DNA of 64,000 nt from IMGVR_UViG_3300027793_000052:253984-317983; one strand, 5' to 3'. Positions 35,984-47,244 are shown, counted from the stretch's first letter. Numbers and translations: made by a program. Notes: generated by a model from the letters alone, not told the origin.

Positions 35984-36008
35984 TAATAATATTAATTAAT
36001 TGTTTTAT

Positions 36009-36659
36009 ATGGAAATTAAAAAACGTATTCTTGGGCTTGATGTGAGCACCAAAACAATCGGGATGGCATTATTCGAAGAAGATGGTAAGTTATTAGAATT
36101 AACACACATCACACCGAAAATAAAACCACAACCAGAAAATAAAATAGAAGAGTTATTTAGAAAGGTTGATGCTTTTGAAAAACTTTTAACCAGATATATG
36201 GATTTAGAAATAGATAAGGTTATCATTGAAGAACCGTTATTGAATAGTAATAATGTTAACACAGTAGGTACTTTGTTACGTTTTAATGGTATGATTTCTA
36301 AAGTTGTTGATGATGTATTAGGTGTTGTACCTGAATTTATTTCTTCATATGATTCCAGGTCTCACGCTTTTCCAGAATTAATGTCCATAAGAACACAAGA
36401 TAAAAAAGGTATACTTTATAAAGAAAAAGATTTAAAATCTAAAAAACCTGTATTGTTTGGTGCATATCCATGGGATGTAGACAAAAAACAAATTATATGG
36501 GAAAAAGTTGCCGATAGAGAACCACAAATTGTTTGGGAATATGATAAAAATATGAAGTTGAAAAAAGAAAACTTTGATATGACTGATGCATATGCTTGTG
36601 TTTTAGGGTATATGCATAAAAACAATTTTTGGAAACCCAAAGTTATTTTACAAACTTAA
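36009..36659 (+). CDS. RuvC-like Holliday junction resolvase
   Basis: ILGLDVSTKTIG, VIIEEP, DKK, FDMTDAY acidic catalytic set. Confidence 0.8.
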   Translation: MEIKKRILGLDVSTKTIGMALFEEDGKLLELTHITPKIKPQPENKIEELFRKVDAFEKLLTRYMDLEIDKVIIEEPLLNSNNVNTVGTLLRFNGMISKVVDDVLGVVPEFISSYDSRSHAFPELMSIRTQDKKGILYKEKDLKSKKPVLFGAYPWDVDKKQIIWEKVADREPQIVWEYDKNMKLKKENFDMTDAYACVLGYMHKNNFWKPKVILQT

Positions 36660-36677
36660 AATTAATAGTTATATTTG
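36647..36677 (+). promoter_or_regulatory. Promoter TTTACA-N17-TATATTTG upstream of primase
   Basis: TTTACA 36647-36652; TATATTTG 36670-36677 also fits the Bacteroidota TAnnTTTG element. Confidence 0.6.
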
Positions 36678-36681
36678 TCAT

Positions 36682-37659
36682 ATGGGACAAATAGAATCCT
36701 CTTTACTATTAGACGTAATTCAAGAAATTTTAGGTAACCCTAGAAAGGAAAACCGAACTAAAGGACAATTTTCATTTGATTGTCCGGTTTGTTCTGCCGA
36801 AAAAGATATGCCACAAGGTGATGGTAAAGGTAACTTTGAAGTTAATGTCAATAAAGGTGTTTACCACTGTTGGTCCTGTGGCGGGACTCATAAAACACAT
36901 GGTTCCATAGGTAAATTAATAACCAAGTTTGGTCGTAAAGAACACAAGAAAAAACTAAAACAATTAGGTATCCAATTAGATGACGTTAAGTCACCAAAAA
37001 AGAAAGAAATACAAGAGGTAAGAGAAATACATTTACCTGAAGAATATACGCCCTTTGAAGGTACAAATTCTAACACTTTACCTTATAAAGAGGCTTGGAA
37101 TTATTTGACCAAGAATAGAAATTTACCACCAGATATAATCTATAAATATAAAATGGGTTATACCACTGAAGGTGATTATGCCTTTAGAATTATTGTCCCT
37201 TCTTATGATAAAGACGGCAAGTTAAATTATTTCACAGGACGCACATGGTTATCCAAAAAGAAACCTAAATATAAAAACCCTGACCTACCTAGGGAAGAGG
37301 TTATTTTTAATGAACAATTAATAAATTGGGATTCCACGATTTATATTGTGGAAGGACCTTTTGACCATATAGTGGTTTATAACTCCATACCAATGTTAGG
37401 TAAAGACCTACATTCAAAACTGTATGATAGTTTAATGAAAAAGGCCAATAGTTGGGTTGTTGTTCTGTTAGATGATGATGCTTGGGATAGAGCAAAACAA
37501 ATATACTCACAACTTAATGTGGGTAGGTTACATGGTAAAGTTAAAGTTATTAAAATGAAAGATGGTTATGACATATCACAGGTTAATGAAGAATTCGGTA
37601 GGGAAGGTGTAATAGACGTTTTAAAATCATCCGTTAAATTAAAAGAAAGTATGTTATAA
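36682..37659 (+). CDS. DNA primase (Zn finger + TOPRIM)
   Basis: CPVC...HCWSC, RIIVP, GR, PKYKN, IVEGPFD, LLDDD. Confidence 0.9.
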   Translation: MGQIESSLLLDVIQEILGNPRKENRTKGQFSFDCPVCSAEKDMPQGDGKGNFEVNVNKGVYHCWSCGGTHKTHGSIGKLITKFGRKEHKKKLKQLGIQLDDVKSPKKKEIQEVREIHLPEEYTPFEGTNSNTLPYKEAWNYLTKNRNLPPDIIYKYKMGYTTEGDYAFRIIVPSYDKDGKLNYFTGRTWLSKKKPKYKNPDLPREEVIFNEQLINWDSTIYIVEGPFDHIVVYNSIPMLGKDLHSKLYDSLMKKANSWVVVLLDDDAWDRAKQIYSQLNVGRLHGKVKVIKMKDGYDISQVNEEFGREGVIDVLKSSVKLKESML

Positions 37660-37680
37660 TTTTTGATATTTATAATTAAG

Positions 37681-37887
37681 ATGGGATTTAATAAAAGATA
37701 TGTTAATAAAAAAATAATTAAAACTGTTTTAAGTGAAGACGGTATTGATGCTTTGATAAATTTTATAAAAAAACCTGACGCTCTAATTATTGAGGATGTT
37801 TATTCACAAAAAGTTTGTGACATTATTTTGGACAACCAAAGTGGTGACGATATTTTAAACAAAATATTAAATATAGATAATGGCTAG
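37681..37887 (+). CDS. Small hypothetical protein
   Basis: MGFNKRYV start, 6 nt after TATTTATA. Confidence 0.55.
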   Translation: MGFNKRYVNKKIIKTVLSEDGIDALINFIKKPDALIIEDVYSQKVCDIILDNQSGDDILNKILNIDNG

Positions 37888-38629
37888 AAAAAGAGATAGC
37901 GTTGTTTGGTTGGAACCTAAAGAACATGTTTATATACATAAAGTTACAAATGAAAAATTTAAATCTGTAACAGGTGTTTTATCCATGTTGGAACCTGAAT
38001 TTAACTCTGAAGAAGTTGCATTAGCTATTTCTATGCAAGACCCCTCCAAGAAGAAGGAACAATATCAGAATATGTCTCAAGAGGAGATATTAGCCGAATG
38101 GAAACGTATTAACGATGAGGCTAATGAATATGGTACACAAATCCATGAAATAATGGAAAGGTATCTATTGGCTGACAAAATTTATATACCACAAGATGAT
38201 TATGAAAGGGAATTAATAACTAAATTTCAGGAGATAGATCCAATGACAAAAGGTACAATATACCCAGAAACTATTTTATTCTCTGAAAAACACAAATTGG
38301 CAGGTACTGCTGATATTATAGAGGATTGTGGTGACTACTTTAATGTATGGGATTGGAAAACTAATAAAGCTTTCAGATTTATTTCGGAATATAACCATTG
38401 GTTAAATCCACCTGTATCACACTTATCAGATTGTCAATATAATGTATACGCTTTACAATTATCAATCTACGCTTACATGTTTCAAATGGAAACTAAAAAG
38501 AAAGTGGGTAGATTGGGTATATTCTATTATGATAAAGAACAAGGATTTAAATTAATACCACTACCTTACATTGGTCTTGAGGCAAAGGCCGTACTAGATT
38601 ATTGGGTAAATAAGAACAACAAAAAATAA
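37880..38629 (+). CDS. PD-(D/E)XK exonuclease (RecB/Cas4-like fold)
   Basis: SVT, GTQIH, PE, LAGTADI, WDWKT, YALQLSIY. Confidence 0.85.
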   Translation: MARKRDSVVWLEPKEHVYIHKVTNEKFKSVTGVLSMLEPEFNSEEVALAISMQDPSKKKEQYQNMSQEEILAEWKRINDEANEYGTQIHEIMERYLLADKIYIPQDDYERELITKFQEIDPMTKGTIYPETILFSEKHKLAGTADIIEDCGDYFNVWDWKTNKAFRFISEYNHWLNPPVSHLSDCQYNVYALQLSIYAYMFQMETKKKVGRLGIFYYDKEQGFKLIPLPYIGLEAKAVLDYWVNKNNKK

Positions 38630-38646
38630 ATAATTTGATATATTGA

Positions 38647-38706
38647 TTATTTTTTTATTTCTTTCCTTTTTCCCCCAGTCCACTTATATATTGGTTCTAT
38701 TTTCAT
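38647..38706 (-). pseudogene. N-terminal remnant of a Dam/D12-class DNA adenine methyltransferase
   Basis: Not in the ORF track. Minus strand reads MKIEPIYKWTGGKRKEIKK*, matching the P-x-x-K-W-x-G-G-K N-terminal motif of Dam-family MTases. Confidence 0.6.
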
Positions 38707-38800
38707 TTATTGATTTTTTATCAATAATAACTAAAATAAATAAAAAGTACATAAAAATATTTTTATTGTTGTGTATTTATATCATACAAAAACAAAAGTT

Positions 38801-39109
38801 ATGCAAGAATTAAATTCAATTACCTATCAAGAAAAAATTAATGAAAATAAACTAACATTAGTTAAGTATGCCGCAAATTGGTGTGGGCCATGTCGCATGT
38901 TAACACCCATCTTAAATAAGGTGGTTGAAAATTATACCGATATTAATGTTGGTGAAGTTAATATTGACACACACCCTGATTTGGCTGTTAAAGATGGCAT
39001 TAGAGGTGTACCGACAATAGTTTTTTATAAAAATGGACAAGTTGTTGATAGAATGGTTGGATTACAACCGGCTCAAGTTTACCAATCTAAAATAGATAGT
39101 TTAAAATAA
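38801..39109 (+). CDS. trxA: Thioredoxin
   Basis: WCGPC active site, GVPT cis-Pro; ATG 38801 follows TATTTATA at 38774. Confidence 0.92.
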   Translation: MQELNSITYQEKINENKLTLVKYAANWCGPCRMLTPILNKVVENYTDINVGEVNIDTHPDLAVKDGIRGVPTIVFYKNGQVVDRMVGLQPAQVYQSKIDSLK

Positions 39110-39115
39110 AAAATA

Positions 39116-39673
39116 TTAATCTCTAACACGAAATTCAATAGAAAGACGGTCAAATCCCATCCAACCTTTAACAATTATCCAACGATATTCAAGGTTTGAT
39201 TGAGGAATAAAACCGTCTTTTAGTTGTATACCAATATTAGATTGTGAAATATTATCCAATATTTCTTGACCAACATTCAATCTAACACCATTAATAAATT
39301 TATTATAATTGGTGACAGCCAAATCATAATCCCCATAACCAAATATTTGAATAACTTTATTCACAGCATCATGACTAGCTACCTTAAAAATAGGTTCAGA
39401 ATATAAAGTCCAATCCTTTAATTTATCTTTATTATATTTTTTAATTTCAACACCATCACCATTTGGTGTAATTGCGTCATACTTATGAAAGACACTACCT
39501 TCTATGGGATAAAACTTTGTTGGGTCAAAATCAACCGAAGATATTTTTTGAAAATTAGAACGACCACTTCCTGACCACTTAATTCTAGGTGACTTAGAAA
39601 CACGACGCCAACCTAAGGTCTCACATATGGAATATTCAAAATCCACACCAGTTTTATTTCTACTTTGTCCCAT
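39116..39673 (-). CDS. Putative PD-(D/E)XK endonuclease, restriction-enzyme-like
   Basis: N-terminal helix G-x-x-F-E, KYDA, VEIKK. Confidence 0.55.
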   Translation of the reverse strand: MGQSRNKTGVDFEYSICETLGWRRVSKSPRIKWSGSGRSNFQKISSVDFDPTKFYPIEGSVFHKYDAITPNGDGVEIKKYNKDKLKDWTLYSEPIFKVASHDAVNKVIQIFGYGDYDLAVTNYNKFINGVRLNVGQEILDNISQSNIGIQLKDGFIPQSNLEYRWIIVKGWMGFDRLSIEFRVRD

Positions 39674-39703
39674 TTACAGATTAAGTATTTTAACGTATTA
39701 TTG
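39673..39703 (+). promoter_or_regulatory. Promoter TTTACA-N17-TATTATTG upstream of the first DUF4338-like gene
   Basis: TTTACA 39673-39678; TATTAT 39696-39701. Confidence 0.55.
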
Positions 39704-39735
39704 TAAGTATATAATATTTTTTTAAAAAAGTAAAA

Positions 39736-40884
39736 ATGGCTGAAGTATTCGATACAAAATTAACACCTGAAGAAACAGAATATTTAACCAACAGATTGAT
39801 GGGTTTTTATAGTGAGTTGGAAACTATTCAGGATTATTTCTTAGAACGTAAGAAAGAGAAGGTGGTTGATATTAACCATGATAAGTTCACAAAACTTATG
39901 TTCGATGATTATGGTATCGAACCTAAAGATATGAAATTCGAGATTGAAATAATAGATGGTAAATTATTTAATCCAGCAACACAAATAATCACATCACTAC
40001 CACTTGAATCTCAAATCGGTAGACAAATAATGATAGGTGTTAAAGAAACAAATACCAATAAGTACGTTGGGTTTATTCGTTTAGCTTCACCTGTTTTATC
40101 TATTAAACCACGTAATGATTTATTTCAGGGGTTTAAAATCACAGCTAATGAAGTGAACAAATATATGATTAACGGTGCTATCATTGTACCCGTACAACCA
40201 TTTGGTTATAACTATTTGGGTGGTAAGTTGTTGGCCTTGATTTGTTGTTCACATGAGGCAAGACAAATGTTAAAAGATAAATACGGTGATAAGATAGATA
40301 CGGTATTTATGGAAACCACATCACTTTATGGTGATATTAAAGGGGTTAGTCAATATGACGGTCTTAAACCTTTTATGAGATATGGTAGTATGACAGAATC
40401 CGACTTATTTTTATTCCCTAATGACGATGTTTTTATGGAAATTAGAAATGTGTTAAGACCATTATACGGTAAACCTGAATGGGGTGGTTCTATGGTTGAC
40501 CCTGGTCCATCTGGCCCTAAGATGAGAGAATTTAATAAAATAATCTCTATATTAAAAAACCACTTAAGGGTTCAAAATCCACAGAAATATAAAGAATTTC
40601 ATGACTTTACTAAGTCACATATGAAAGCTAAAACCAAAAAAAGGTATTACTACTGTAATTACGGTTATGATAATATTGGGGCATATATATCTAGTGACGG
40701 TAAAGTACCTTTAGTTAAGAGAGATAATTGGGATAGATACCATTTAACTCACATGATTGATTGGTGGAAGTCAAAAGCACAAAACAGATACGAGACTTTA
40801 AAAAATGATGGTAGATTAAGAAACGATTTGGAGATATACACATTGGATAGGATTGAATCTGGTAATGTTGACATGGTAAGATAA
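39736..40884 (+). CDS. DUF4338 / DruA-like protein, paralogue 1
   Basis: GRQI...VGFIRLASP...KPRN; IVPVQPFGYNYLGGKLLALICCS; ETTSLYG...SQYDGL. Confidence 0.75.
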   Translation: MAEVFDTKLTPEETEYLTNRLMGFYSELETIQDYFLERKKEKVVDINHDKFTKLMFDDYGIEPKDMKFEIEIIDGKLFNPATQIITSLPLESQIGRQIMIGVKETNTNKYVGFIRLASPVLSIKPRNDLFQGFKITANEVNKYMINGAIIVPVQPFGYNYLGGKLLALICCSHEARQMLKDKYGDKIDTVFMETTSLYGDIKGVSQYDGLKPFMRYGSMTESDLFLFPNDDVFMEIRNVLRPLYGKPEWGGSMVDPGPSGPKMREFNKIISILKNHLRVQNPQKYKEFHDFTKSHMKAKTKKRYYYCNYGYDNIGAYISSDGKVPLVKRDNWDRYHLTHMIDWWKSKAQNRYETLKNDGRLRNDLEIYTLDRIESGNVDMVR

Positions 40885-41087
40885 TGTTAGAATTTAAAAA
40901 TCCAATACCAGTAGTAGTTGAAGATAACAAAGAAGGTTATGCCATATATGTAACAAATGGCGGTTCATTTGAGAATGATATATGGTGTGTGGTTCATTGT
41001 GACGGCGGCATTGTTAGACATTACAGAAGTGACCAAATAAAAATACATAATAATTTAACTTTAGATATAAAAAAACATGGACAGTAA
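40884..41087 (+). CDS. Small hypothetical protein (beta-rich)
   Basis: 67 aa, TAATG-coupled; EGYAIY...NDIWCV...GIVRHY. Confidence 0.6.
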   Translation: MLEFKNPIPVVVEDNKEGYAIYVTNGGSFENDIWCVVHCDGGIVRHYRSDQIKIHNNLTLDIKKHGQ

Positions 41088-41478
41088 AAAAGTATCAAAT
41101 CTATTAAGGGCTGTAGCAGACCTTATGGATAACACAACAGAAGTTGTACAAGAAACACAAAAAGATATGGTTAAAACCATAGAAAAGAACACAAATGACT
41201 ATTTAGAACATTCTTTAAAACTTATGAGAAAGATTGAAGATAATGACACAATTAGAGCTTATAAGAATAAAATGGGTAAGCAAAATAAAGTTTTGTCTGA
41301 AGCCTTACTAGAAATACAAAAGTTACGTGAGAATGCTATAGAAGACATGATTAGAGATGCTAAAGGCATATCCAACCCAATAGACTTTTTTAATAAAACT
41401 ATCACTAATAGTGAAAAATTAGGTAGACAGTTTGTTAAAGAAGGTGAAATTTTAAATAAGGCTATTACACAAGAATAA
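41077..41478 (+). CDS. Hypothetical helical protein
   Basis: 133 aa, coiled-coil-like. Confidence 0.55.
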   Translation: MDSKKVSNLLRAVADLMDNTTEVVQETQKDMVKTIEKNTNDYLEHSLKLMRKIEDNDTIRAYKNKMGKQNKVLSEALLEIQKLRENAIEDMIRDAKGISNPIDFFNKTITNSEKLGRQFVKEGEILNKAITQE

Positions 41479-41481
41479 TTT

Positions 41482-42126
41482 ATGTACTGTGAGGTATCAC
41501 CAAGACAATCTGGTAAAACTACAAGGTTGATAACAGCCTTGGTGGAATACCTACGTAACAATATACGTAATAACCATTATGTTGCTTTAGTCACACCTAA
41601 CTCTAATATAACTAAAGATTTACTTAATCTTATTAGAGATAGGTTGGCTATAGAATGTTCTTATGATGTAGGTATGGAATGGCCTAGTGATGGTATATAC
41701 CGATTGGTTGATGATTACCATATGAAACACATCATAACAAAAACAAGGTTTGGTGAGTATAGAAATGAACCTAATATGTGGTTTTTCGATGAGTTTGCCT
41801 CCATACCAATGGATAAAGTTTTACACCCAATTAACCAAACCCTAATAACAAATGCCTATTATTGTACAACACCATCAAATGGTATTAACTTAACAACAGA
41901 TACTATAGTTGAGTATTGTCGAGATAATAATATAAACATTCAATTCCATAACCCTTGGACACCTAATAGACTTAGGGAACAAGGTGGTTTGGAACCTTAT
42001 ATTAGAAATCATGTATTGGGTAGTTGGGTAGAATATATGGCATCAAACGGTTTTAACATAGAAGAGTTAAAATCAGAAATCATTTCAAAATATATTAAAA
42101 AACATCGTTTTATTAATGGTAAATAG
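41482..42126 (+). CDS. Stand-alone P-loop NTPase resembling a terminase large-subunit ATPase domain
   Basis: SPRQSGKTT Walker A, WFFDEFA Walker B, CTTP motif III; no nuclease domain. Confidence 0.65.
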   Translation: MYCEVSPRQSGKTTRLITALVEYLRNNIRNNHYVALVTPNSNITKDLLNLIRDRLAIECSYDVGMEWPSDGIYRLVDDYHMKHIITKTRFGEYRNEPNMWFFDEFASIPMDKVLHPINQTLITNAYYCTTPSNGINLTTDTIVEYCRDNNINIQFHNPWTPNRLREQGGLEPYIRNHVLGSWVEYMASNGFNIEELKSEIISKYIKKHRFINGK

Positions 42127-43066
42127 AGAACAGTTAAAACATGATTTGTTAAATTTTACCTTCTTAACACAGGAAGAACAAAAGGCTAAACAACCCAAGA
42201 AGTACGATTCAATATGGATTAATGAAAGTATTGTAGATGATCCAATAAACATTAAACCATTATTAATACCTGTGGATTCCACTAGTAAACTATGGAGGGA
42301 GTGGAAAAGTGTGGAAGAACATGTGTCTAGTTTCCCATTTAGACGTAGTCCTGGTAGAAATAACTATTTCCTTGTTAAAAACGAGTATGATGGTAAAAAT
42401 CTAGGTATTTTAGATGTGGCTGCCGATTTCTTAGCATTAGGACCAAGAGATAGACACATTGGTTGGAACAAAGATGAAAGAGTTGTTAGAAATAGAAATA
42501 TTGCTAATATATCTGTTTGTGTACCTACTAGACATTTTGGTTATAACATGGCAGGGGGTAAGTTATTAACATTGTTAGCTGCCTCTAATTTTGTTGGTGA
42601 CCATTGGAAATTAAAGTATGGTGATGATTTGGCTGGATTAACTGTAACTTCCTTATACGGTAGAGGTGTACAATACAATAGATTAAAACACTTTAAATAT
42701 TTAGGTCTAACACAAGGACAAGGTACAGTACAGATAGACGAGGACCTATATCAACAAATGAGGTTGGTTGTGGAGGAGGAAGAAGGTGAAATACCTGGAG
42801 GTCAATTTACAAGTGGTAAAAACTCAAGAATAAATATTATTAGAAAGGCTAGTGATTACTTAAATATTGACGCTAGGGTTTTAACAACCCACGGTAATCG
42901 TAGAGGGATTTATTGGTGTGATAGAGGTGATAACACTTCAGAGTTTTTAAGAGGTATTGACAAAGACTTCAAGGTTAAAGAAGGTTTGGATATAGAAACA
43001 CTAACAAACCATTGGAGAGAAAGGTGGGCCTATAAACGTATTGAAAATGTTAAAACTAAAGTTTAA
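42116..43066 (+). CDS. DUF4338 / DruA-like protein, paralogue 2
   Basis: PGRNNYFLV...LGPRDRHIGW; VPTRHFGYNMAGGKLLTLLAAS; TSLYG...QYNRL; LGLTQGQG; W.ERWA.KR. Confidence 0.8.
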   Translation: MVNREQLKHDLLNFTFLTQEEQKAKQPKKYDSIWINESIVDDPINIKPLLIPVDSTSKLWREWKSVEEHVSSFPFRRSPGRNNYFLVKNEYDGKNLGILDVAADFLALGPRDRHIGWNKDERVVRNRNIANISVCVPTRHFGYNMAGGKLLTLLAASNFVGDHWKLKYGDDLAGLTVTSLYGRGVQYNRLKHFKYLGLTQGQGTVQIDEDLYQQMRLVVEEEEGEIPGGQFTSGKNSRINIIRKASDYLNIDARVLTTHGNRRGIYWCDRGDNTSEFLRGIDKDFKVKEGLDIETLTNHWRERWAYKRIENVKTKV

Positions 43067-43087
43067 ACTTAATAAAAAATAATTAAT

Positions 43088-43876
43088 ATGATTAAATCTG
43101 TTGTACACTGTGCTGATATACACCTACGTTTGTTTAAAAGACATGAGGAATATACAGAACAATTTGAGAAGTTTTATAAAGAATGTGAAGAAATACAACC
43201 TGACAGGATTGTTATTGTTGGTGACTTAGTACATTCTAAGAATCAAATGACACCTGAACTTATTTATATGGTTACAACCTTTTTAAATAATTGTTCAAAA
43301 ATAGCTATGACTGTTATTACATTAGGTAACCATGATTTCTTGGCAAACAATTTAGATAGGATGGATGCTTTATCACCCATCATATCCACAATGGATAACC
43401 CTAATATCTTATTTTTAAAACACACAGGCACATACAGAGATGAAAATGTAGTTTGGTGTGTTTATGGACATATGGAAGGTTCTGAGAGACCTAATATAGA
43501 AGAGGCAAGAGAATTATATGGTGATGATGTGACTTATATAGGTTTATATCATGATCCTTTGGTTGGTTTAAAAACTAACGTTGGGTTTGAATTTGAGGAT
43601 GGTAAAGATATCTCTATTTTTGAAGGTTGTGATATGGTTATGTGTGGTGATATCCACAAGTATCAGGTAATGAAACACCGTAAAACACCAATTGTAATGC
43701 CATCATCAATGATTCAACAAGACTTTGGTGAAGACCCATATAACCACGGTTATGTGTTATGGGATATCACAACAAAAGAACATGAGTTGAAGAGATTACC
43801 AAACGATTATGGGTTTTATACTTTTAAAATTAAATCTATTGAGGATATAGAAACAGAGTCAGAGAGATTAGTATGA
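43088..43876 (+). CDS. SbcD / Mre11 / T4 gp47-like nuclease (metallophosphoesterase)
   Basis: ADIH, GDLVH, GNHD, YH, GDIHKYQ. Confidence 0.88.
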   Translation: MIKSVVHCADIHLRLFKRHEEYTEQFEKFYKECEEIQPDRIVIVGDLVHSKNQMTPELIYMVTTFLNNCSKIAMTVITLGNHDFLANNLDRMDALSPIISTMDNPNILFLKHTGTYRDENVVWCVYGHMEGSERPNIEEARELYGDDVTYIGLYHDPLVGLKTNVGFEFEDGKDISIFEGCDMVMCGDIHKYQVMKHRKTPIVMPSSMIQQDFGEDPYNHGYVLWDITTKEHELKRLPNDYGFYTFKIKSIEDIETESERLV

Positions 43877-44142
43877 ACTATGATGAACAAATAAAATCAA
43901 TTGAAGAACTTATAGGTTATTTTGATTTTAAAATCAATAACGTACTTAATAGAACCGAAACTGAATATAGGGGTGGGCTTAGAAGACTTATGTTACAACG
44001 TAATAAATTAATTGATAGTTATCATATTTTATTAGAAACAAGACGTAGAAACGTATTAGGTATAAAAAAACAAATAAAACCACATAAATTCAACGAACCA
44101 ATAAATTTTGATATAACATTCTTAACAGATTATTATTTTTAA
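43873..44142 (+). CDS. Hypothetical protein
   Basis: 89 aa, coupled on both sides. Confidence 0.55.
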   Translation: MNYDEQIKSIEELIGYFDFKINNVLNRTETEYRGGLRRLMLQRNKLIDSYHILLETRRRNVLGIKKQIKPHKFNEPINFDITFLTDYYF

Positions 44143-44837
44143 TGGACTTATTACCTAAAAATATTAAAGACGATATTTGGAATTATTGTAGAGCCAATAA
44201 TATAACCAATATGGATAAGTTCATAGTTGATATGGTTATCCAAGGATTGAATATTGAGAAATATGGTAACTCACCTATTGTACCACAAGTTATAGAAAAA
44301 GAGGTTATAAAAGAGGTTGAAATTGAAAAGATTGTTGAAGTACCTGTTGAGAAAATAGTAGAGAAGGTGGTTGAAGTACCAGTGGAAAAGATTGTGGAGA
44401 AAACAATAGAGGTACCTGTAGAAAAAATTGTAGAAAAGGAAGTTTATATCACCAATAATGAAGAAGTTGAAAAATTAACTCTCGACATTACCAAATTAAA
44501 GGAGGATAATAAAAAATCATCTGATAAGGTAGAAAAATTATCTAAAGCCAATGAATTGTTAAATTCTGATTTAAAAACAAAAGAACTAGAAGTTGGTGAA
44601 ATAAAATCTGAACGTGATAACTTATTGTTAGAGTTAGATAAAGAAAAAACCAAGGTTAGTAATTCTGAATTAAATAAACTATACCAAAAAATACAAAATT
44701 TGGAGTCCCTTTTGGAAGTTGAAAAAAATAGAAGTAAACCTAAAATTGATATTACAAACCCTTTTAATGATAAACCCAAGGATGTTATTAAATGGGTACC
44801 ACAGGAAAAAGATGATAAAGATTTATATAACGAATAG
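44142..44837 (+). CDS. Coiled-coil protein with EKIVEVPV repeats
   Basis: Repeat block followed by heptad-rich region. Confidence 0.7.
   Translation: MDLLPKNIKDDIWNYCRANNITNMDKFIVDMVIQGLNIEKYGNSPIVPQVIEKEVIKEVEIEKIVEVPVEKIVEKVVEVPVEKIVEKTIEVPVEKIVEKEVYITNNEEVEKLTLDITKLKEDNKKSSDKVEKLSKANELLNSDLKTKELEVGEIKSERDNLLLELDKEKTKVSNSELNKLYQKIQNLESLLEVEKNRSKPKIDITNPFNDKPKDVIKWVPQEKDDKDLYNE
44289..44450 (+). repeat. EKIVEVPV / EKIV peptide repeats
   Basis: VIEKEVIKEVEIEKIVEVPVEKIVEKVVEVPVEKIVEKTIEVPVEKIVEKEVYI. Confidence 0.8.
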
Positions 44838-44871
44838 TGACTTATTATAAAATATATAACATAATTAACTA

Positions 44872-47244
44872 ATGACTACAATAACAAAAGAAAAAATAAA
44901 AATACCAGCTAAAGCATCGGTTAGAGTAATATGGGAAGGTGACCCCGTAGAATATACAAAAGATAGGGTAAAACGTATTGAACAATATATCGCAGAAAAA
45001 TATTCTGTAGATAAAGTACAAGTTATTTTTAAACCCAAAAAACAAAATACTGAACACGGGGAAGTTGAAATGGCCATAACGGATAACGTTATGGATATCA
45101 ATTACCAACGTAGATTATTTAAAGAATGGTTAGATGGTAATAAAATTGACGTGGATTGGGATAGACTTATTAGGTTGGATGATAAGGTTAACGATAAGTT
45201 AAAAGAAAAACGTGATATAGAATATCGTTATCGTAATTGGCATATTAAAGAATTGGAGTGGGATAATTTCCTATCTTATGGTGATGGAAATAAGTTGTCT
45301 ATAGATGGTTTAAAAGGTATTACAACAATTACCTCTAATCCACCTAATATGGGTGGTAAGACTGCTATGGCAATAGATTTACTTTTATTCTTATTCTTTA
45401 ACGAAACAACAAGAACTAAAGTTGCTGCACAAATTTTTAATAAATTTAGGGATGTTAATAATGTTAGGGTCAAAGGTGTTATTAATATAGACGGTGGTGA
45501 CTATGTCATAGAAAGAAACTTAAGTAGAAGTAAAAAGAAAACCGAAGAAGGTTATAATGTTAAAACTGATTTAAATTTTCAGAAGATATTATCTGATGGT
45601 TCTGTTTTAAATTTAGAAGGTGAACAACGTAGGGAAACGGATGAGTTTATTAAAAAATCTATTGGTGATGTTGATGATTTTCTTTTAACTATCATTGCTA
45701 CATCAGATAATTTGGAAGAATTAATACACACTCTACCAACACAAAAAGGTAAGTTATTATCTAAATTTATTGGTTTAGAAGTTATAGAACAAAAAGAAGA
45801 AATTGTTAAAGAAATGAAATCGGCTTGGGCTAAAAACTTAAAATCAGATCAATATAACACAGGTGATTTAAAAAAAGAAATTGAAAATCTAGAAAGTAAA
45901 ATTAAAGATTTTAATGAAGATATTAAAATATCTGAAGAAACATTATCTTCATTAAAAGAAGAAATTGTTGATACAACTTCCATTAAAGAAACTTTACTAT
46001 CCCAAAAAATTATTATTGATGGTGAAATAATAAAATTAAGACCTGAAGATATCAATAGAGAAATAGATACCGTAATTGAAAAGGGTAAAAAATCTAAAGA
46101 AAAGTACGATATACTAAAAACCGAATTTGATAGATTAACTGAAATAGAATATGATGCTCAGATACATAAAGAGTGGAAGCAACAATTAAGTGATTTAAAT
46201 ACATCTAGAAGTCATAAAACTATAAAAAAAGACAGCGTTGAGGGTTTAATTAAAAATCTTGAAGAGGGTGAATTTTGTTCTCTATGTAAACAACCTTTAA
46301 AAGATGTTGACCATTCTGATGAAATTGCTAGCAATAAAATTACCTTAGAAAAGTTAATCGAAGATATCAAAGGGTTTGATACTGAAATTGAAGAGGCTAA
46401 AAAAGAAATTGAAAAGTTTGATAAAATTAAAGAACAGGTTGATGAATATGATAGAAAATCTATTATGATTGACAAAATTGAACTTGAGATTGAAAACTTT
46501 AGACTTCAACTAAAAGATAAAAAAGATTTAAAGAAAAAATACGAGGACAATATCGGTAATATAGAAAAAAACAAAGACCTAGATTCCAAAATACTTGGTT
46601 ATAACGCTAAACTGGATAGGTTAAATAGAGAAAAAGACGAATTAATAACCAAAATACAACGTAATAAAACTGAAATTGAACGTTTTGAAGATAACATAGT
46701 TAAAAACAAAGAATTAATTAAAACAATTAAAGTTGAAGAAGAGGTTAAACTTATTTTTGATATATACATTAGGATAGTTGGTAAAAACGGTATTACAAAA
46801 TTAATAATGAAAAATGTTATACCTTTATTAAATTCAGAATTAGAAAGATTATTAACGGATTCCGCTGATTTTAAAATTACCGTGGATTTAAATTCTAAAC
46901 AGGAGGTTGATTTTATGTTAGAAAAAGAAGAGGGTGGTAAAAAAATAAGTTATTTATTAACAGAAGGTAGTGGTTTAGAAAAAACGTTAGGTTCTTTAGC
47001 CTTAAGAATGGTACTATCAAGGGTCAGTACATTACCCAAACCAAATATAATAGTGTTAGATGAAATTTTTGGTAAGGTGGCTAATGAAAATTTAGACTTG
47101 GTGGGTAATTTTTTTCAAAAGTGCTCTGAGATGTTTGATAATATATTTCTGATTACTCATAACCCGTTAGTTAAAGATTGGAGTACAAATATTATAACAA
47201 TAGAAAAAATTAATAATATTTCTTCTTTGAAGTTATCAAGATAA
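44872..47244 (+). CDS. SbcC / Rad50 / T4 gp46-like ATPase with N-terminal extension
   Basis: NFLSYG, NMGGKT Walker A, coiled coil with CSLC hook, GSGLE signature, IVLDE, LITH. Confidence 0.9.
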   Translation: MTTITKEKIKIPAKASVRVIWEGDPVEYTKDRVKRIEQYIAEKYSVDKVQVIFKPKKQNTEHGEVEMAITDNVMDINYQRRLFKEWLDGNKIDVDWDRLIRLDDKVNDKLKEKRDIEYRYRNWHIKELEWDNFLSYGDGNKLSIDGLKGITTITSNPPNMGGKTAMAIDLLLFLFFNETTRTKVAAQIFNKFRDVNNVRVKGVINIDGGDYVIERNLSRSKKKTEEGYNVKTDLNFQKILSDGSVLNLEGEQRRETDEFIKKSIGDVDDFLLTIIATSDNLEELIHTLPTQKGKLLSKFIGLEVIEQKEEIVKEMKSAWAKNLKSDQYNTGDLKKEIENLESKIKDFNEDIKISEETLSSLKEEIVDTTSIKETLLSQKIIIDGEIIKLRPEDINREIDTVIEKGKKSKEKYDILKTEFDRLTEIEYDAQIHKEWKQQLSDLNTSRSHKTIKKDSVEGLIKNLEEGEFCSLCKQPLKDVDHSDEIASNKITLEKLIEDIKGFDTEIEEAKKEIEKFDKIKEQVDEYDRKSIMIDKIELEIENFRLQLKDKKDLKKKYEDNIGNIEKNKDLDSKILGYNAKLDRLNREKDELITKIQRNKTEIERFEDNIVKNKELIKTIKVEEEVKLIFDIYIRIVGKNGITKLIMKNVIPLLNSELERLLTDSADFKITVDLNSKQEVDFMLEKEEGGKKISYLLTEGSGLEKTLGSLALRMVLSRVSTLPKPNIIVLDEIFGKVANENLDLVGNFFQKCSEMFDNIFLITHNPLVKDWSTNIITIEKINNISSLKLSR

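What the first reader, a model, noticed from the sequence alone, without database searches (positions are those of the whole stretch)
39736..43066. Two diverged DUF4338/DruA-like paralogues in one operon
The proteins align by eye over the core: VPVQPFGYNYLGGKLLALICCS...KDKYGD...TTSLYG...QYDGL versus VPTRHFGYNMAGGKLLTLLAAS...KLKYGD...VTSLYG...QYNRL; also GRQI..VK/GRNN..VK and PRN/PRD. Outside these blocks they are very divergent. An old, retained duplication suggests a heterodimer or two specificities. The G-x-x-x-x-G-G-K-L-L segment resembles the acyl-CoA-binding loop of GNAT enzymes (inference).
Basis: partly seen in the sequence, partly recalled or inferred. Interest (0 to 1): 0.65.

Follow-up and report, generated by a model that had tools for sequence, protein, structure and literature searches.

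The report
Two DruA-like GNAT enzymes in phage
A large freshwater T4-like phage carries two anciently diverged copies of a DruA/DUF4338 acyltransferase-fold enzyme inside its DNA replication and recombination gene block. They are real and conserved, most likely work independently rather than as a pair, and may modify nucleic acid, although that function is untested.

Summary
Window 39736-40884 (382 aa) and 42116-43066 (316 aa) both pass Pfam's DruA/DUF4338 threshold. They align at 33% identity over the core (E 2e-18) and share 39 strongly conserved positions along the whole length. Both fold confidently (pLDDT 88 and 92) as GNAT acyltransferases. The FGYN-x-x-GGKLL block lies between strand beta4 and helix alpha3, where GNATs bind the CoA pyrophosphate. 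The best structural match in the PDB is phage Mu Mom, the tRNA-dependent DNA adenine modifier, but it is statistically tied with ordinary GNATs, and no sequence-profile link to Mom was found.

The two copies belong to different deep phage lineages. Type 1 also sits between clamp-loader genes 44 and 62 in Synechococcus myoviruses. Type 2 occurs alone in other phages. An obligate heterodimer is therefore unlikely. Both genes are under strong purifying selection.

My best reading (about 0.45) is two independent nucleic-acid-directed, probably DNA-directed, acyl- or aminoacyl-transferases with different specificities. It is inferred from gene context, ParB_N fusions, DndF fusions and a report that methylase-less Druantia I produces an adenine-N6 signal.

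DUF4338 as a GNAT, and DruA-like proteins in phages, are already in the literature. This is a new member of a known kind.

The parts
39736..40884 (+). DruA/DUF4338 GNAT-fold protein, type 1 (P0001, 382 aa). It is the orthologue of cyanophage T4-GC 1216 and of the HTVC008M gene that follows the DNA polymerase.
   Evidence: Pfam PF14236 55.9 bits. phrog_19197 E 4.5e-90. AF2 pLDDT 88.2. GNAT fold, top match Mom 8bv8_A with Z 10.2 and 184 residues aligned. Tree clade 100/99. dN/dS 0.06-0.08.
40201..40233 (+). FGYNYLGGKLL block of P0001, in the beta4-alpha3 loop (GNAT motif-A position).
   Evidence: secondary structure
40318..40332 (+). TSLYG block of P0001 (beta5 strand of the GNAT core); it is followed by the conserved Q206-Y207.
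40884..41087 (+). 67-aa ORF with no family match. Its start overlaps the stop of P0001 (ATGA). No homologue was found in the related loci.
41077..41478 (+). 133-aa ORF of unknown function, conserved in L006 and L007 (50-62% identity).
41482..42126 (+). 214-aa P-loop protein (Walker A PRQSGKTT, Walker B-like FFDEF). It looks like a terminase-N / TmcA-NAT10-helicase ATPase by language-model features only. It is conserved in L006 and L007 and absent from L009.
   Evidence: (AAA_14, weak)
42116..43066 (+). DruA/DUF4338 GNAT-fold protein, type 2 (P0002, 316 aa). It matches the full length of the Pfam DruA model.
   Evidence: Pfam PF14236 102.3 bits over positions 27-297 of 297. PADLOC DruA 92 bits. 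AF2 pLDDT 91.6. Exhaustive PDB search: top match Mom 8bv8_B with Z 10.6 and 173 aligned; all top 50 matches are GNATs. Tree clade 100/99. dN/dS 0.07-0.08.
42536..42568 (+). FGYNMAGGKLL block of P0002 (beta4-alpha3 loop).
42647..42661 (+). TSLYG block of P0002 (beta5); it is followed by Q186-Y187.
39674..39735 (.). 62-nt divergent intergenic region upstream of P0001. It holds one promoter-like site (TTTACA-17-TATTAT, spanning 39673-39701).
   Evidence: The scan as a whole was not above chance.
39116..39673 (-). Neighbouring 185-aa reverse-strand ORF, restriction-endonuclease-like by language-model features only. It is present in L006 and absent from L007.
43088..47244 (+). Downstream context. 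SbcD/gp47-like nuclease at 43088-43876, two small ORFs, then SbcC/gp46-like ATPase at 44872-47244, on the same strand and tightly packed.
36000..39109 (+). Upstream context. RuvC-like resolvase at 36000-36659, gp61-like primase at 36682-37659, PD-(D/E)XK exonuclease at 37880-38629, and a thioredoxin-like ORF at 38771-39109. The thioredoxin call rests on the ORF's CGPC motif; no family scan was run on this ORF.

Best explanation
Shown. The window comes from a 318-kb freshwater T4-like phage. It encodes two anciently diverged members of the DUF4338/DruA family. Both have a GNAT acyltransferase fold, both keep the whole family signature, and both are under purifying selection. They lie 1.2 kb apart, on one strand, inside the replication and recombination gene block.

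Inferred. Each copy is an autonomous enzyme, not half of an obligate heterodimer. Each transfers an acyl or aminoacyl group, from acyl-CoA or a charged tRNA, onto nucleic acid, most likely onto bases of replicating phage DNA. This would resemble what phage Mu Mom does to adenine N6. The two copies would differ in target site, base or donor. The phage would then write two different protective marks on its DNA while the replisome genes are expressed.

Proposed residue roles. The conserved G-G-K at the start of helix alpha3 would hold the donor's phosphate. The T-S-L-Y-G strand and the Q-Y of helix alpha4 would form the catalytic centre. The invariant arginines (R81, R111, R216, R263 and R308 in P0002) would grip the polyanionic substrate.
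For: Family and fold.

Shared signature with bacterial DUF4338 (S72, G80-R81, G97, R111, G147-G148-K149-L150, S157, Y168, T178-S179-L180-Y181-G182, Q186-Y187, T199, Y266, N273, W300, R308).

Both genes constrained, dN/dS 0.06-0.08.

Independence of the two types:
- Type 1 occurs alone in about 20 cultured cyanomyoviruses.
- Type 2 occurs alone in L011, L044, L045 and L046.

DNA-directed context:
- Here the genes lie between primase/exonuclease and SbcCD.
- In S-SSM7, S-T4, S-SCSM2R, S-CREM1, S-PRM1 and S-SM2 the type-1 gene sits between clamp-loader genes 44 and 62.
- In HTVC008M it directly follows the DNA polymerase.

Structure:
- Mom (8bv8) is the top hit of an exhaustive search of 48,161 chains. 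It has the longest aligned stretch, 173-184 residues against about 140-150 for ordinary GNATs.
- The DUF4338 models carry a helical insertion between beta6 and beta7 (P0002 residues about 200-262). Mom has its essential HTH-like insertion at the same site (PMC13219725).

Domain fusions:
- ParB_N-DruA fusions form a largely viral Atlas cluster of 235 members. One fusion was verified here in L016.
- DUF4338 GNAT domains are fused to DndF (PMC10853773).

Other:
- Druantia type I, which has DruA but no methylase domain, is reported to create a new adenine-N6 ('m6A') signal in host DNA (preprint 10.1101/2024.04.14.589459).
- Most family members are basic, pI about 8-9.5.
Against: - No experiment exists on any DUF4338 protein.
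- The Z-score for Mom is within 1 unit of many ordinary GNATs, which counts as tied.
- Profile-profile comparison with a Mom family alignment gives probability 0.1. The Pfam Mom model does not hit these proteins.
- The Mom authors themselves state that GNAT substrates cannot be predicted from structure.
- The same phage already has a bona fide Mom-family gene elsewhere. An adenine-N6 mark may therefore already be covered.
- Residue-level equivalence to Mom R111/S124/D149/R151 could not be established.
- Gene context in a replication block is suggestive only.
Confidence: 0.45

Rival explanations
1. The two proteins are ordinary acyl-CoA-dependent N-acyltransferases. They act on proteins (host or phage replisome, or defence proteins) or on small molecules such as polyamines, not on nucleic acid.
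For: Most solved GNATs that score within one Z unit of Mom are protein N-terminal, ribosomal-protein, spermidine or antibiotic acetyltransferases. The conserved G-G-K loop sits at the CoA-pyrophosphate position.
Against: The ParB_N and DndF fusions, the constant placement inside replisome and recombination operons, and the Druantia link all point to DNA. The large conserved beta6-beta7 insertion and the C-terminal helix with invariant W and R are not features of small-molecule GNATs.
Confidence: 0.25
2. The enzymes modify RNA or tRNA in the manner of TmcA/NAT10. A GNAT would work with a separate P-loop ATPase, the 214-aa protein at 41482-42126, to acetylate a base in tRNA or rRNA. Alternatively, they acylate aminoacyl-tRNA like the TacT/AtaT toxins.
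For: Kre33/NAT10 and TmcA appear among the structural matches with long alignments (6zqb_JA Z 8.6 with 189 aligned; 7mq8_NJ Z 8.8 with 165 aligned; 2zpa). The intervening P-loop protein resembles Terminase_6N / NAT10_TcmA_helicase clusters by language-model features, score 0.91-0.93.
Against: The P-loop gene is absent from L009 and from all solo occurrences. The Atlas scores lie in the range that 4-10% of shuffled proteins reach, and the shared-feature counts are low. No tRNA genes lie in the window.
Confidence: 0.12
3. The two proteins form an obligate heterodimer, one catalytic subunit and one regulatory or specificity subunit.
For: The genes are close together on one strand in the window, in L006 and in L007. 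A second DUF4338-like gene also lies next to the type-2 gene in L009. Mom itself is a tight dimer.
Against: Each type is found alone in many other phages. Both keep every signature residue, so neither looks like a pseudoenzyme. In HTVC008M the two copies are 13 kb apart. The upstream partner in L009 is a different, much shorter DUF4338-like protein, not a type-1 orthologue.
Confidence: 0.07
4. The proteins act as decoys or mimics of host DruA that poison a Druantia type I complex, rather than as enzymes in their own right.
For: They share a family with a defence-system component. Phages do capture defence components.
Against: The catalytic-looking signature is fully conserved under strong purifying selection. 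The genes sit in replisome operons across distant phages. The phage lineages are deep and separate from the bacterial sequences sampled. No other Druantia part is present in the genome.
Confidence: 0.06

Closest known systems
Pfam PF14236 DruA / DUF4338 (first gene of Druantia type I; GNAT domain according to Aravind and co-workers, PMC10853773)
   Same: Both proteins pass the family threshold. They share the signature residues with bacterial members and have the GNAT fold.
   Different: They are encoded by a phage, without DruB-E, in a replication block. They belong to phage-specific clades separate from the bacterial sequences sampled. P0001 matches only the first 184 of the 297 model positions.
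Cyanophage and pelagiphage 'putative cytoplasmic protein' T4-GC 1216 (S-SSM7 ADO98239, S-SM2 ADO97486, HTVC008M AGE60456; annotated 'methylcarbamoylase mom' in S-SCSM2R; called DruA-like in the Phold preprint)
   Same: They are orthologous to P0001: 32-38% identity over 94-99% of the length, in one clade with 100/99 support. They are also embedded among replication genes.
   Different: Those phages carry one copy, placed between genes 44 and 62. Here the gene lies between the primase/exonuclease and SbcCD modules and is accompanied by a second, type-2 copy.
Phage Mu Mom (PF25680; PDB 8BV8): a GNAT that transfers glycine from Gly-tRNA(Gly) to adenine N6 of dsDNA (PMC13219725)
   Same: It is the best structural match for both models, with the longest alignment. 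It is a GNAT core with an insertion between beta6 and beta7. It is a phage enzyme.
   Different: No sequence-profile similarity was found and no PF25680 hit. The proteins here are larger (316-382 aa against 241 aa). Equivalence of the catalytic residues is not established. The phage has a separate, true Mom-family gene.
TmcA / NAT10 / Kre33 RNA cytidine acetyltransferases (P-loop helicase plus GNAT)
   Same: The GNAT domains superpose with long alignments. A terminase/TmcA-helicase-like P-loop gene lies between the two GNAT genes.
   Different: The ATPase is a separate small protein and is not conserved with the GNATs in other phages. Its similarity rests on language-model features only.

Membership tests
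Pfam PF14236 DruA/DUF4338 | Score above the curated gathering threshold (27 bits) | tested here: met
   P0001 scores 55.9 bits and P0002 scores 102.3 bits. The six-frame scan of the genome gives the same two places.
Pfam PF14236 DruA/DUF4338 | Conserved family signature shared with bacterial members (G-R, R111, GGKL, TSLYG, QY, C-terminal Y, W, R) | tested here: met
   An alignment of 39 phage and bacterial sequences has 27 positions that are at least 80% conserved across all groups.
GNAT superfamily | Mixed alpha/beta GNAT fold | tested here: met
   The AF2 models have pLDDT 91.6 and 88.2. In the search of 48,161 PDB representatives, 112 chains reach Z of at least 8 and the top 50 are all GNATs.
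GNAT superfamily | Motif A pyrophosphate-binding loop (Q/R-x-x-G-x-G/A) between beta4 and alpha3 | tested here: inconclusive
   An invariant G-G-K begins helix 147-155, directly after strand 129-137. The position is right. However, the loop is longer than the canonical one, contains an extra short helix, and does not match the literal consensus.
GNAT superfamily | Binding of acyl-CoA (or another activated acyl donor) and acyl transfer | not testable with these tools
   This needs biochemistry or a ligand-aware structure.
Druantia type I defence system | DruA encoded together with DruB-D and the roughly 2,000-aa DruE helicase (MZB/DUF1998) | tested here: not met
   No PF09369 match was found in the 318-kb genome, although the control genomes ring. 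PADLOC hits DruA models only. The neighbours are replication and recombination genes.
Druantia type I defence system | Cellular defence island that protects against phage | tested here: not met
   The genes lie in a virus record with baseplate, helicase, RNR and SbcCD genes.
Mom family (PF25680) | Sequence membership (HMM above 27.1 bits) | tested here: not met
   The Pfam scan at E up to 1 gives no Mom hit. The PF25680 scan of the genome finds five other places but not these two genes. hhalign of A1 against the Mom alignment A4 gives probability 0.1.
Mom family (PF25680) | GNAT core with an essential HTH-like insertion between beta6 and beta7 | tested here: inconclusive
   The models have a helical insertion at that site. 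Mom aligns over 173-184 residues, more than any ordinary GNAT. No residue-level superposition was available.
Mom family (PF25680) | Essential residues R111, S124, D149 and R151; Gly-tRNA(Gly)-dependent modification of dA | not testable with these tools
   Residue equivalences could not be derived without coordinates. The activity needs an assay.
TmcA/NAT10-type acetyltransferase | P-loop helicase/ATPase module coupled to the GNAT | tested here: inconclusive
   A separate 214-aa P-loop gene lies between the two GNAT genes. Atlas feature scores of 0.91-0.93 point to Terminase_6N / NAT10_TcmA_helicase clusters. Pfam gives only a weak AAA_14 hit. The gene is absent from L009.

The most novel reading that the evidence does not exclude
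DUF4338/DruA enzymes are a second, Mom-like class of DNA base acyl- or aminoacyl-transferases. In Druantia type I, DruA would write the self-mark; this would explain the unexplained adenine-N6 signal of a system that has no methylase. Phages would have captured and diversified the enzyme into at least three lineages and wired it into replisome operons. This phage would use two of the lineages to lay two different protective marks on its own DNA. One of them may be tied to the neighbouring restriction-endonuclease-like gene.
Probability: 0.25. Interest if true: 0.8.

Novelty: new member of a known kind. Interest (0 to 1): 0.42.

Why it matters
DruA is the founding gene of Druantia type I, and its role in that widespread defence system is unknown. 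Its phage relatives are very abundant: the word search found more than 4,600 protein clusters for type 1 alone. They sit in the middle of replisome operons.

If these enzymes modify DNA as Mom does, three things would follow. They would be a new route to hypermodified phage DNA. They would explain how a Druantia system without a methylase marks self DNA. And phages carrying two or three lineages would be natural experiments in specificity.

As it stands, the finding adds a well-documented two-copy case and a concrete, cheap test: express the genes and look for new nucleosides. It does not add new biology.

Tried and rejected
- Heterodimer prediction for P0001 and P0002 with their alignments: no answer (ipSAE 0.00 in two runs, controls not run). 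This counts neither for nor against binding.
- Sequence link to Mom. hhalign of the DUF4338 alignment against Mu Mom alone, and against a 37-member Mom alignment, gave probability 0.1-0.15. phmmer and hmmsearch against PDB sequences found nothing meaningful.
- NCBIfam: no family for either protein.
- Megablast of 39000-44000 against 50,697 phage records: no match.
- Promoter and terminator scan of 38500-44000: 29 promoter-like sites against 32 expected, and 2 terminator-like sites against 2.1 expected. This is uninformative.
- tRNA scan of the window: none.
- Pattern scan of 185,579 prokaryote genomes with the family alignment. It returned only 8 loci, all from MAGs or single-cell assemblies (several on short contigs). 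It did not reach classical Druantia DruA.
- I then sampled 401 genomes of one phylum with PF14236; 19 were positive. I took four of those bacterial proteins for comparison. The best one (G286, 228 bits) has no ORF of about 2,000 aa beside it. I therefore could not confirm that any of my bacterial comparators sits in a true Druantia operon.
- HTVC008M AGE60438 (335 aa, upstream of the gp46-side copy) was tested as a possible second tandem paralogue. It is unrelated.
- The large representative protein search was not used.
No alternative genetic code was needed.
Full report
**What is there.** The window is the last 64 kb (253984-317983) of a 317,983-bp IMG/VR virus record that is estimated to be 96% complete. 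It has about 30% G+C. It encodes T4-like functions:
- a DnaB-type helicase, ribonucleotide reductase and a baseplate wedge protein;
- a RuvC-like resolvase, a gp61-like primase, a PD-(D/E)XK exonuclease and an SbcD/gp47 homologue, and an SbcC/gp46 homologue.

The DNA is found in freshwater metagenomes. Inside this replication and recombination block lie the two ORFs of the finding, at exactly the stated ends. P0001 is 39736-40884 (382 aa) and P0002 is 42116-43066 (316 aa).

- BLASTP aligns the two at 33% identity over 156 residues, E 2e-18.
- Both exceed Pfam's threshold for PF14236 (DruA, formerly DUF4338): 55.9 and 102.3 bits against a cut-off of 27.
- Both hit the PADLOC DruA models and phrog_19197.
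- A six-frame scan of the whole genome finds only these two copies.

The homology is not confined to the core. In an alignment of both families, the pair aligns over 309 columns at 24.6% identity. 39 positions are at least 90% conserved in both families, including arginines, a tyrosine and a tryptophan in the C-terminal third. The same signature is kept in a third phage lineage and in the bacterial DUF4338 proteins I sampled.

Both genes are under strong purifying selection relative to their orthologues in two related viral contigs. dN/dS is 0.06-0.08, although dS is near saturation. Neither copy looks like a decaying gene or a pseudoenzyme.

**Fold.** AlphaFold2 models built from these alignments are confident: pLDDT 91.6 for P0002 and 88.2 for P0001.
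- Foldseek, its VIA-align re-ranking, and an exhaustive VIA-align search of 48,161 PDB representatives all return only GNAT acyltransferases. In the exhaustive search, 112 chains reach Z of at least 8.
That is the beta4-alpha3 junction, where GNATs hold the pyrophosphate of CoA. The inference is right in position.
- The loop is longer than the canonical motif A, and donor binding is untested.
- DUF4338 had already been called a GNAT domain in print (PMC10853773).

For both models the top PDB match is phage Mu Mom (8BV8). Z is 10.6 with 173 residues aligned for P0002, and 10.2 with 184 aligned for P0001. Ordinary GNATs align over about 140-150 residues.

Mom transfers glycine from Gly-tRNA(Gly) to adenine N6 of dsDNA. 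It needs an HTH-like insertion between beta6 and beta7 (PMC13219725). The DUF4338 models have a larger helical insertion at the same place.

At the sequence level I found no link:
- hhalign against a 37-member Mom alignment gives probability 0.1;
- the Pfam Mom model does not hit these genes.

The proteins are therefore not Mom-family members. They may work like Mom, but that is a lead and not a result.

**Evolution of the pair.** The word search found more than 4,600 protein clusters for P0001 and only 82 for P0002. A maximum-likelihood tree of 40 sequences resolves three phage lineages.
- Type 1 (support 100/99) holds P0001, the Synechococcus myovirus proteins known as T4-GC 1216, and one HTVC008M protein.
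- Type 2 (support 100/99) holds P0002 and its relatives.
- Type 3 (support 100/99) holds the Mosig protein and the other HTVC008M protein.

The four bacterial proteins and two metagenomic proteins (P0082, P0083) group apart (95/78). The root is not known. The divergence of the two window genes therefore predates the radiation of these phage groups. Whether it began as a duplication within a phage or as two separate acquisitions cannot be decided from this tree.

Pelagibacter phage HTVC008M also has two copies, but they are type 1 plus type 3 and lie 13 kb apart.

**Do they need each other?** Probably not.
- Type 1 occurs alone in about 20 cultured cyanomyoviruses.
- Type 2 occurs alone, with no other PF14236 gene within 6-8 kb, on four other phage contigs.

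The close pairing is seen in the window and in two viral contigs that share 83-84% identity with it (L006, L007). There the arrangement is type 1, a 130-aa ORF, a P-loop protein, then type 2.

In a 364-kb phage contig (L009) the type-2 gene is again preceded by a PF14236 gene. That gene encodes a much shorter, very divergent protein which lacks GGKLL and TSLYG. The intervening gene there is a homing-endonuclease-like ORF. The genes between the paralogues are thus variable.

A complex prediction for the pair gave no answer and is not counted either way.

**Transcription unit.** The five genes from 39736 to 43066 overlap or are separated by at most 3 nt. The next genes downstream, through SbcC, continue in the same way. 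Six metatranscriptome runs from different studies hold the stretch. In one of them a single 3,169-nt contig spans 39681-42849. This fits co-transcription but does not prove it. Such libraries can contain DNA, and contigs show neither strand nor ends. Consensus promoter and terminator scans were at chance level.

**What they most likely do.** The evidence for a nucleic-acid substrate is circumstantial but comes from several directions.
1. Gene position. In six Synechococcus phages the type-1 gene sits between clamp-loader genes 44 and 62. In HTVC008M it follows the DNA polymerase. Type 3 follows the gp47/gp46 nuclease genes. Here the pair lies between primase/exonuclease and SbcCD.
2. Domain fusions. 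A search of the ESM Atlas by shape finds a 235-member, mostly viral cluster of DruA fused to ParB_N. I confirmed one such fusion in a single-cell assembly contig. From my own knowledge, ParB_N domains are commonly fused to phage DNA methyltransferases. DUF4338 is also fused to DndF, a protein of the phosphorothioate restriction system.
3. The Druantia link. A preprint reports that Druantia type I creates a new 'm6A' motif signal in host DNA although the system has no methylase domain, and the responsible gene is unknown (10.1101/2024.04.14.589459). DruA, a GNAT whose nearest solved structure modifies adenine N6, is an obvious candidate. That connection is my inference.
4. Charge. Many invariant arginines and a basic pI fit a polyanionic substrate.

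Three points count against this reading. GNAT substrates are notoriously unpredictable. The Mom similarity is fold-level only. The phage already has a true Mom-family gene elsewhere.

I put about 0.45 on two independent nucleic-acid-directed, probably DNA-directed, acyl or aminoacyl transferases with different specificities. The alternatives get about 0.25 for protein or small-molecule acyltransferases, 0.12 for an RNA- or tRNA-directed activity that may use the neighbouring P-loop protein, and under 0.1 each for an obligate heterodimer and for a Druantia decoy.

**Comparison with what is known, and novelty.** DUF4338 as a GNAT is published. DruA-like proteins in six Synechococcus phages are noted in the Phold preprint. 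Phage Mosig's copy is annotated 'DUF4338 domain-containing protein'. The S-SCSM2R orthologue has been called 'methylcarbamoylase mom' on structural grounds (PMC12801897). My tests do not support that name as a family assignment.

The window adds the following:
- a clear two-lineage case in one gene block;
- evidence that phage DUF4338 proteins form at least three deep lineages;
- evidence that both copies are constrained.

This is a new member of a known kind. It is of moderate interest, mainly because it sharpens a testable hypothesis about DruA.

Noticed in passing
own genome outside the window: G000:C1:10290-11033 (L047:1441-2184): A bona fide Mom-family protein (247 aa, Pfam PF25680 93.4 bits, full-length match) with a Cys-rich C-terminal tail. 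The phage therefore carries a true Mom homologue in addition to the two DUF4338 GNATs.
   Followed up: partly
own genome outside the window: L048 (ORF 346-2028), L049, L050, L051: Four ORFs of 545-588 aa match the Mom model (positions about 3-150; only positions 3-50 in L051). In the one examined (L048) the match is a C-terminal Mom-like GNAT domain (Mom 26.9 bits, just under the cut-off) behind a REase_MTES_1575/Vsr-like module and zinc-finger-like repeats. They look like a multi-copy family of homing-endonuclease type.
   Followed up: partly
window 39116-39673 (-): The only reverse-strand gene in this block (185 aa) has no Pfam or PHROG hit. By language-model features (0.95, 189 shared features) it resembles viral 'restriction endonuclease family' clusters; the nearest Pfam family is R.HinP1I. 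It is present in L006 (64% identity) and absent from L007. A nuclease gene divergent from a putative DNA-modifying gene could be an R-M-like pair.
   Followed up: partly
window 41482-42126 (+): A 214-aa P-loop protein (PRQSGKTT ... FFDEF) lies between the two GNAT genes. Atlas features (0.91-0.93) point to terminase-N / NAT10-TcmA helicase clusters. It is conserved in L006 and L007 (39-44% identity) but replaced by another gene in L009.
   Followed up: partly
L016:1154-2911 (single-cell assembly AG-453-E14) and an ESM Atlas cluster: ParB_N-DruA fusion proteins. L016 has ParB_N at residues 3-70 (27.7 bits) and DruA at 297-527 (51.5 bits). The Atlas cluster has 235 members, 94% with ParB_N, and about 80% of those with a recorded taxon are viral.
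   Followed up: partly
BFVD matches to the P0002 model: DUF4338-like proteins occur in giant viruses (Faunusvirus E 6e-21, Yasminevirus, Dasosvirus), some as parts of proteins of 1,150-1,260 aa.
   Followed up: no
L036, L039-L043 (S-SSM7, S-T4, S-SCSM2R, S-CREM1, S-PRM1, S-SM2): In Synechococcus myoviruses the type-1 gene is inserted between clamp-loader genes 44 and 62, which are adjacent in T4. Its ends usually overlap the neighbouring genes. GenBank names for it vary: 'putative cytoplasmic protein', 'iron-binding protein', 'methylcarbamoylase mom', 'hypothetical protein'.
   Followed up: yes
L009:7215-7934 and L009:6325-7026: In a 364-kb phage contig the gene between the two PF14236 genes is a 239-aa ORF with repeats reminiscent of NUMOD-type homing-endonuclease DNA-binding modules (read by eye; the collection records no Pfam hit for it). 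The upstream PF14236 gene there encodes only 233 aa and lacks GGKLL and TSLYG. Its C-terminal half (GSIYKADNW) looks more like the corresponding stretch of Mom.
   Followed up: partly
bacterial genomes G007-G286: PF14236 matched in 19 of 401 genomes of one phylum. There were often 2-3 copies per genome, and many lay on very short contigs (1-3 kb). This suggests repeated or mobile copies that break assemblies. Some ORFs are 700-1,300 aa with a large insertion inside the domain.
   Followed up: no
L011 (GCA_050480025.1 contig JBCNEE010000004.1): A type-2 protein named 'DruA [Geobacillus thermodenitrificans]' in NCBI sits on a 118-kb contig that carries Pol III alpha, RNR and many small ORFs. It is 63% identical to P0002. 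The contig looks like a phage contig inside a bacterial assembly rather than a Druantia locus.
   Followed up: partly
window 39432-39735, run X8: One 842-nt contig from an RNA library matches only 21-23 nt on each side of the 39453-39712 interval and has 15 other letters in between. This hints at a co-occurring variant that differs in the restriction-endonuclease-like gene.
   Followed up: no
whole stretch 39000-43500: All runs that hold the stretch are labelled freshwater, plankton or 'fungus' metagenomes. The cultured relatives of both proteins are marine (Synechococcus and Pelagibacter phages). No host can be named.
   Followed up: no
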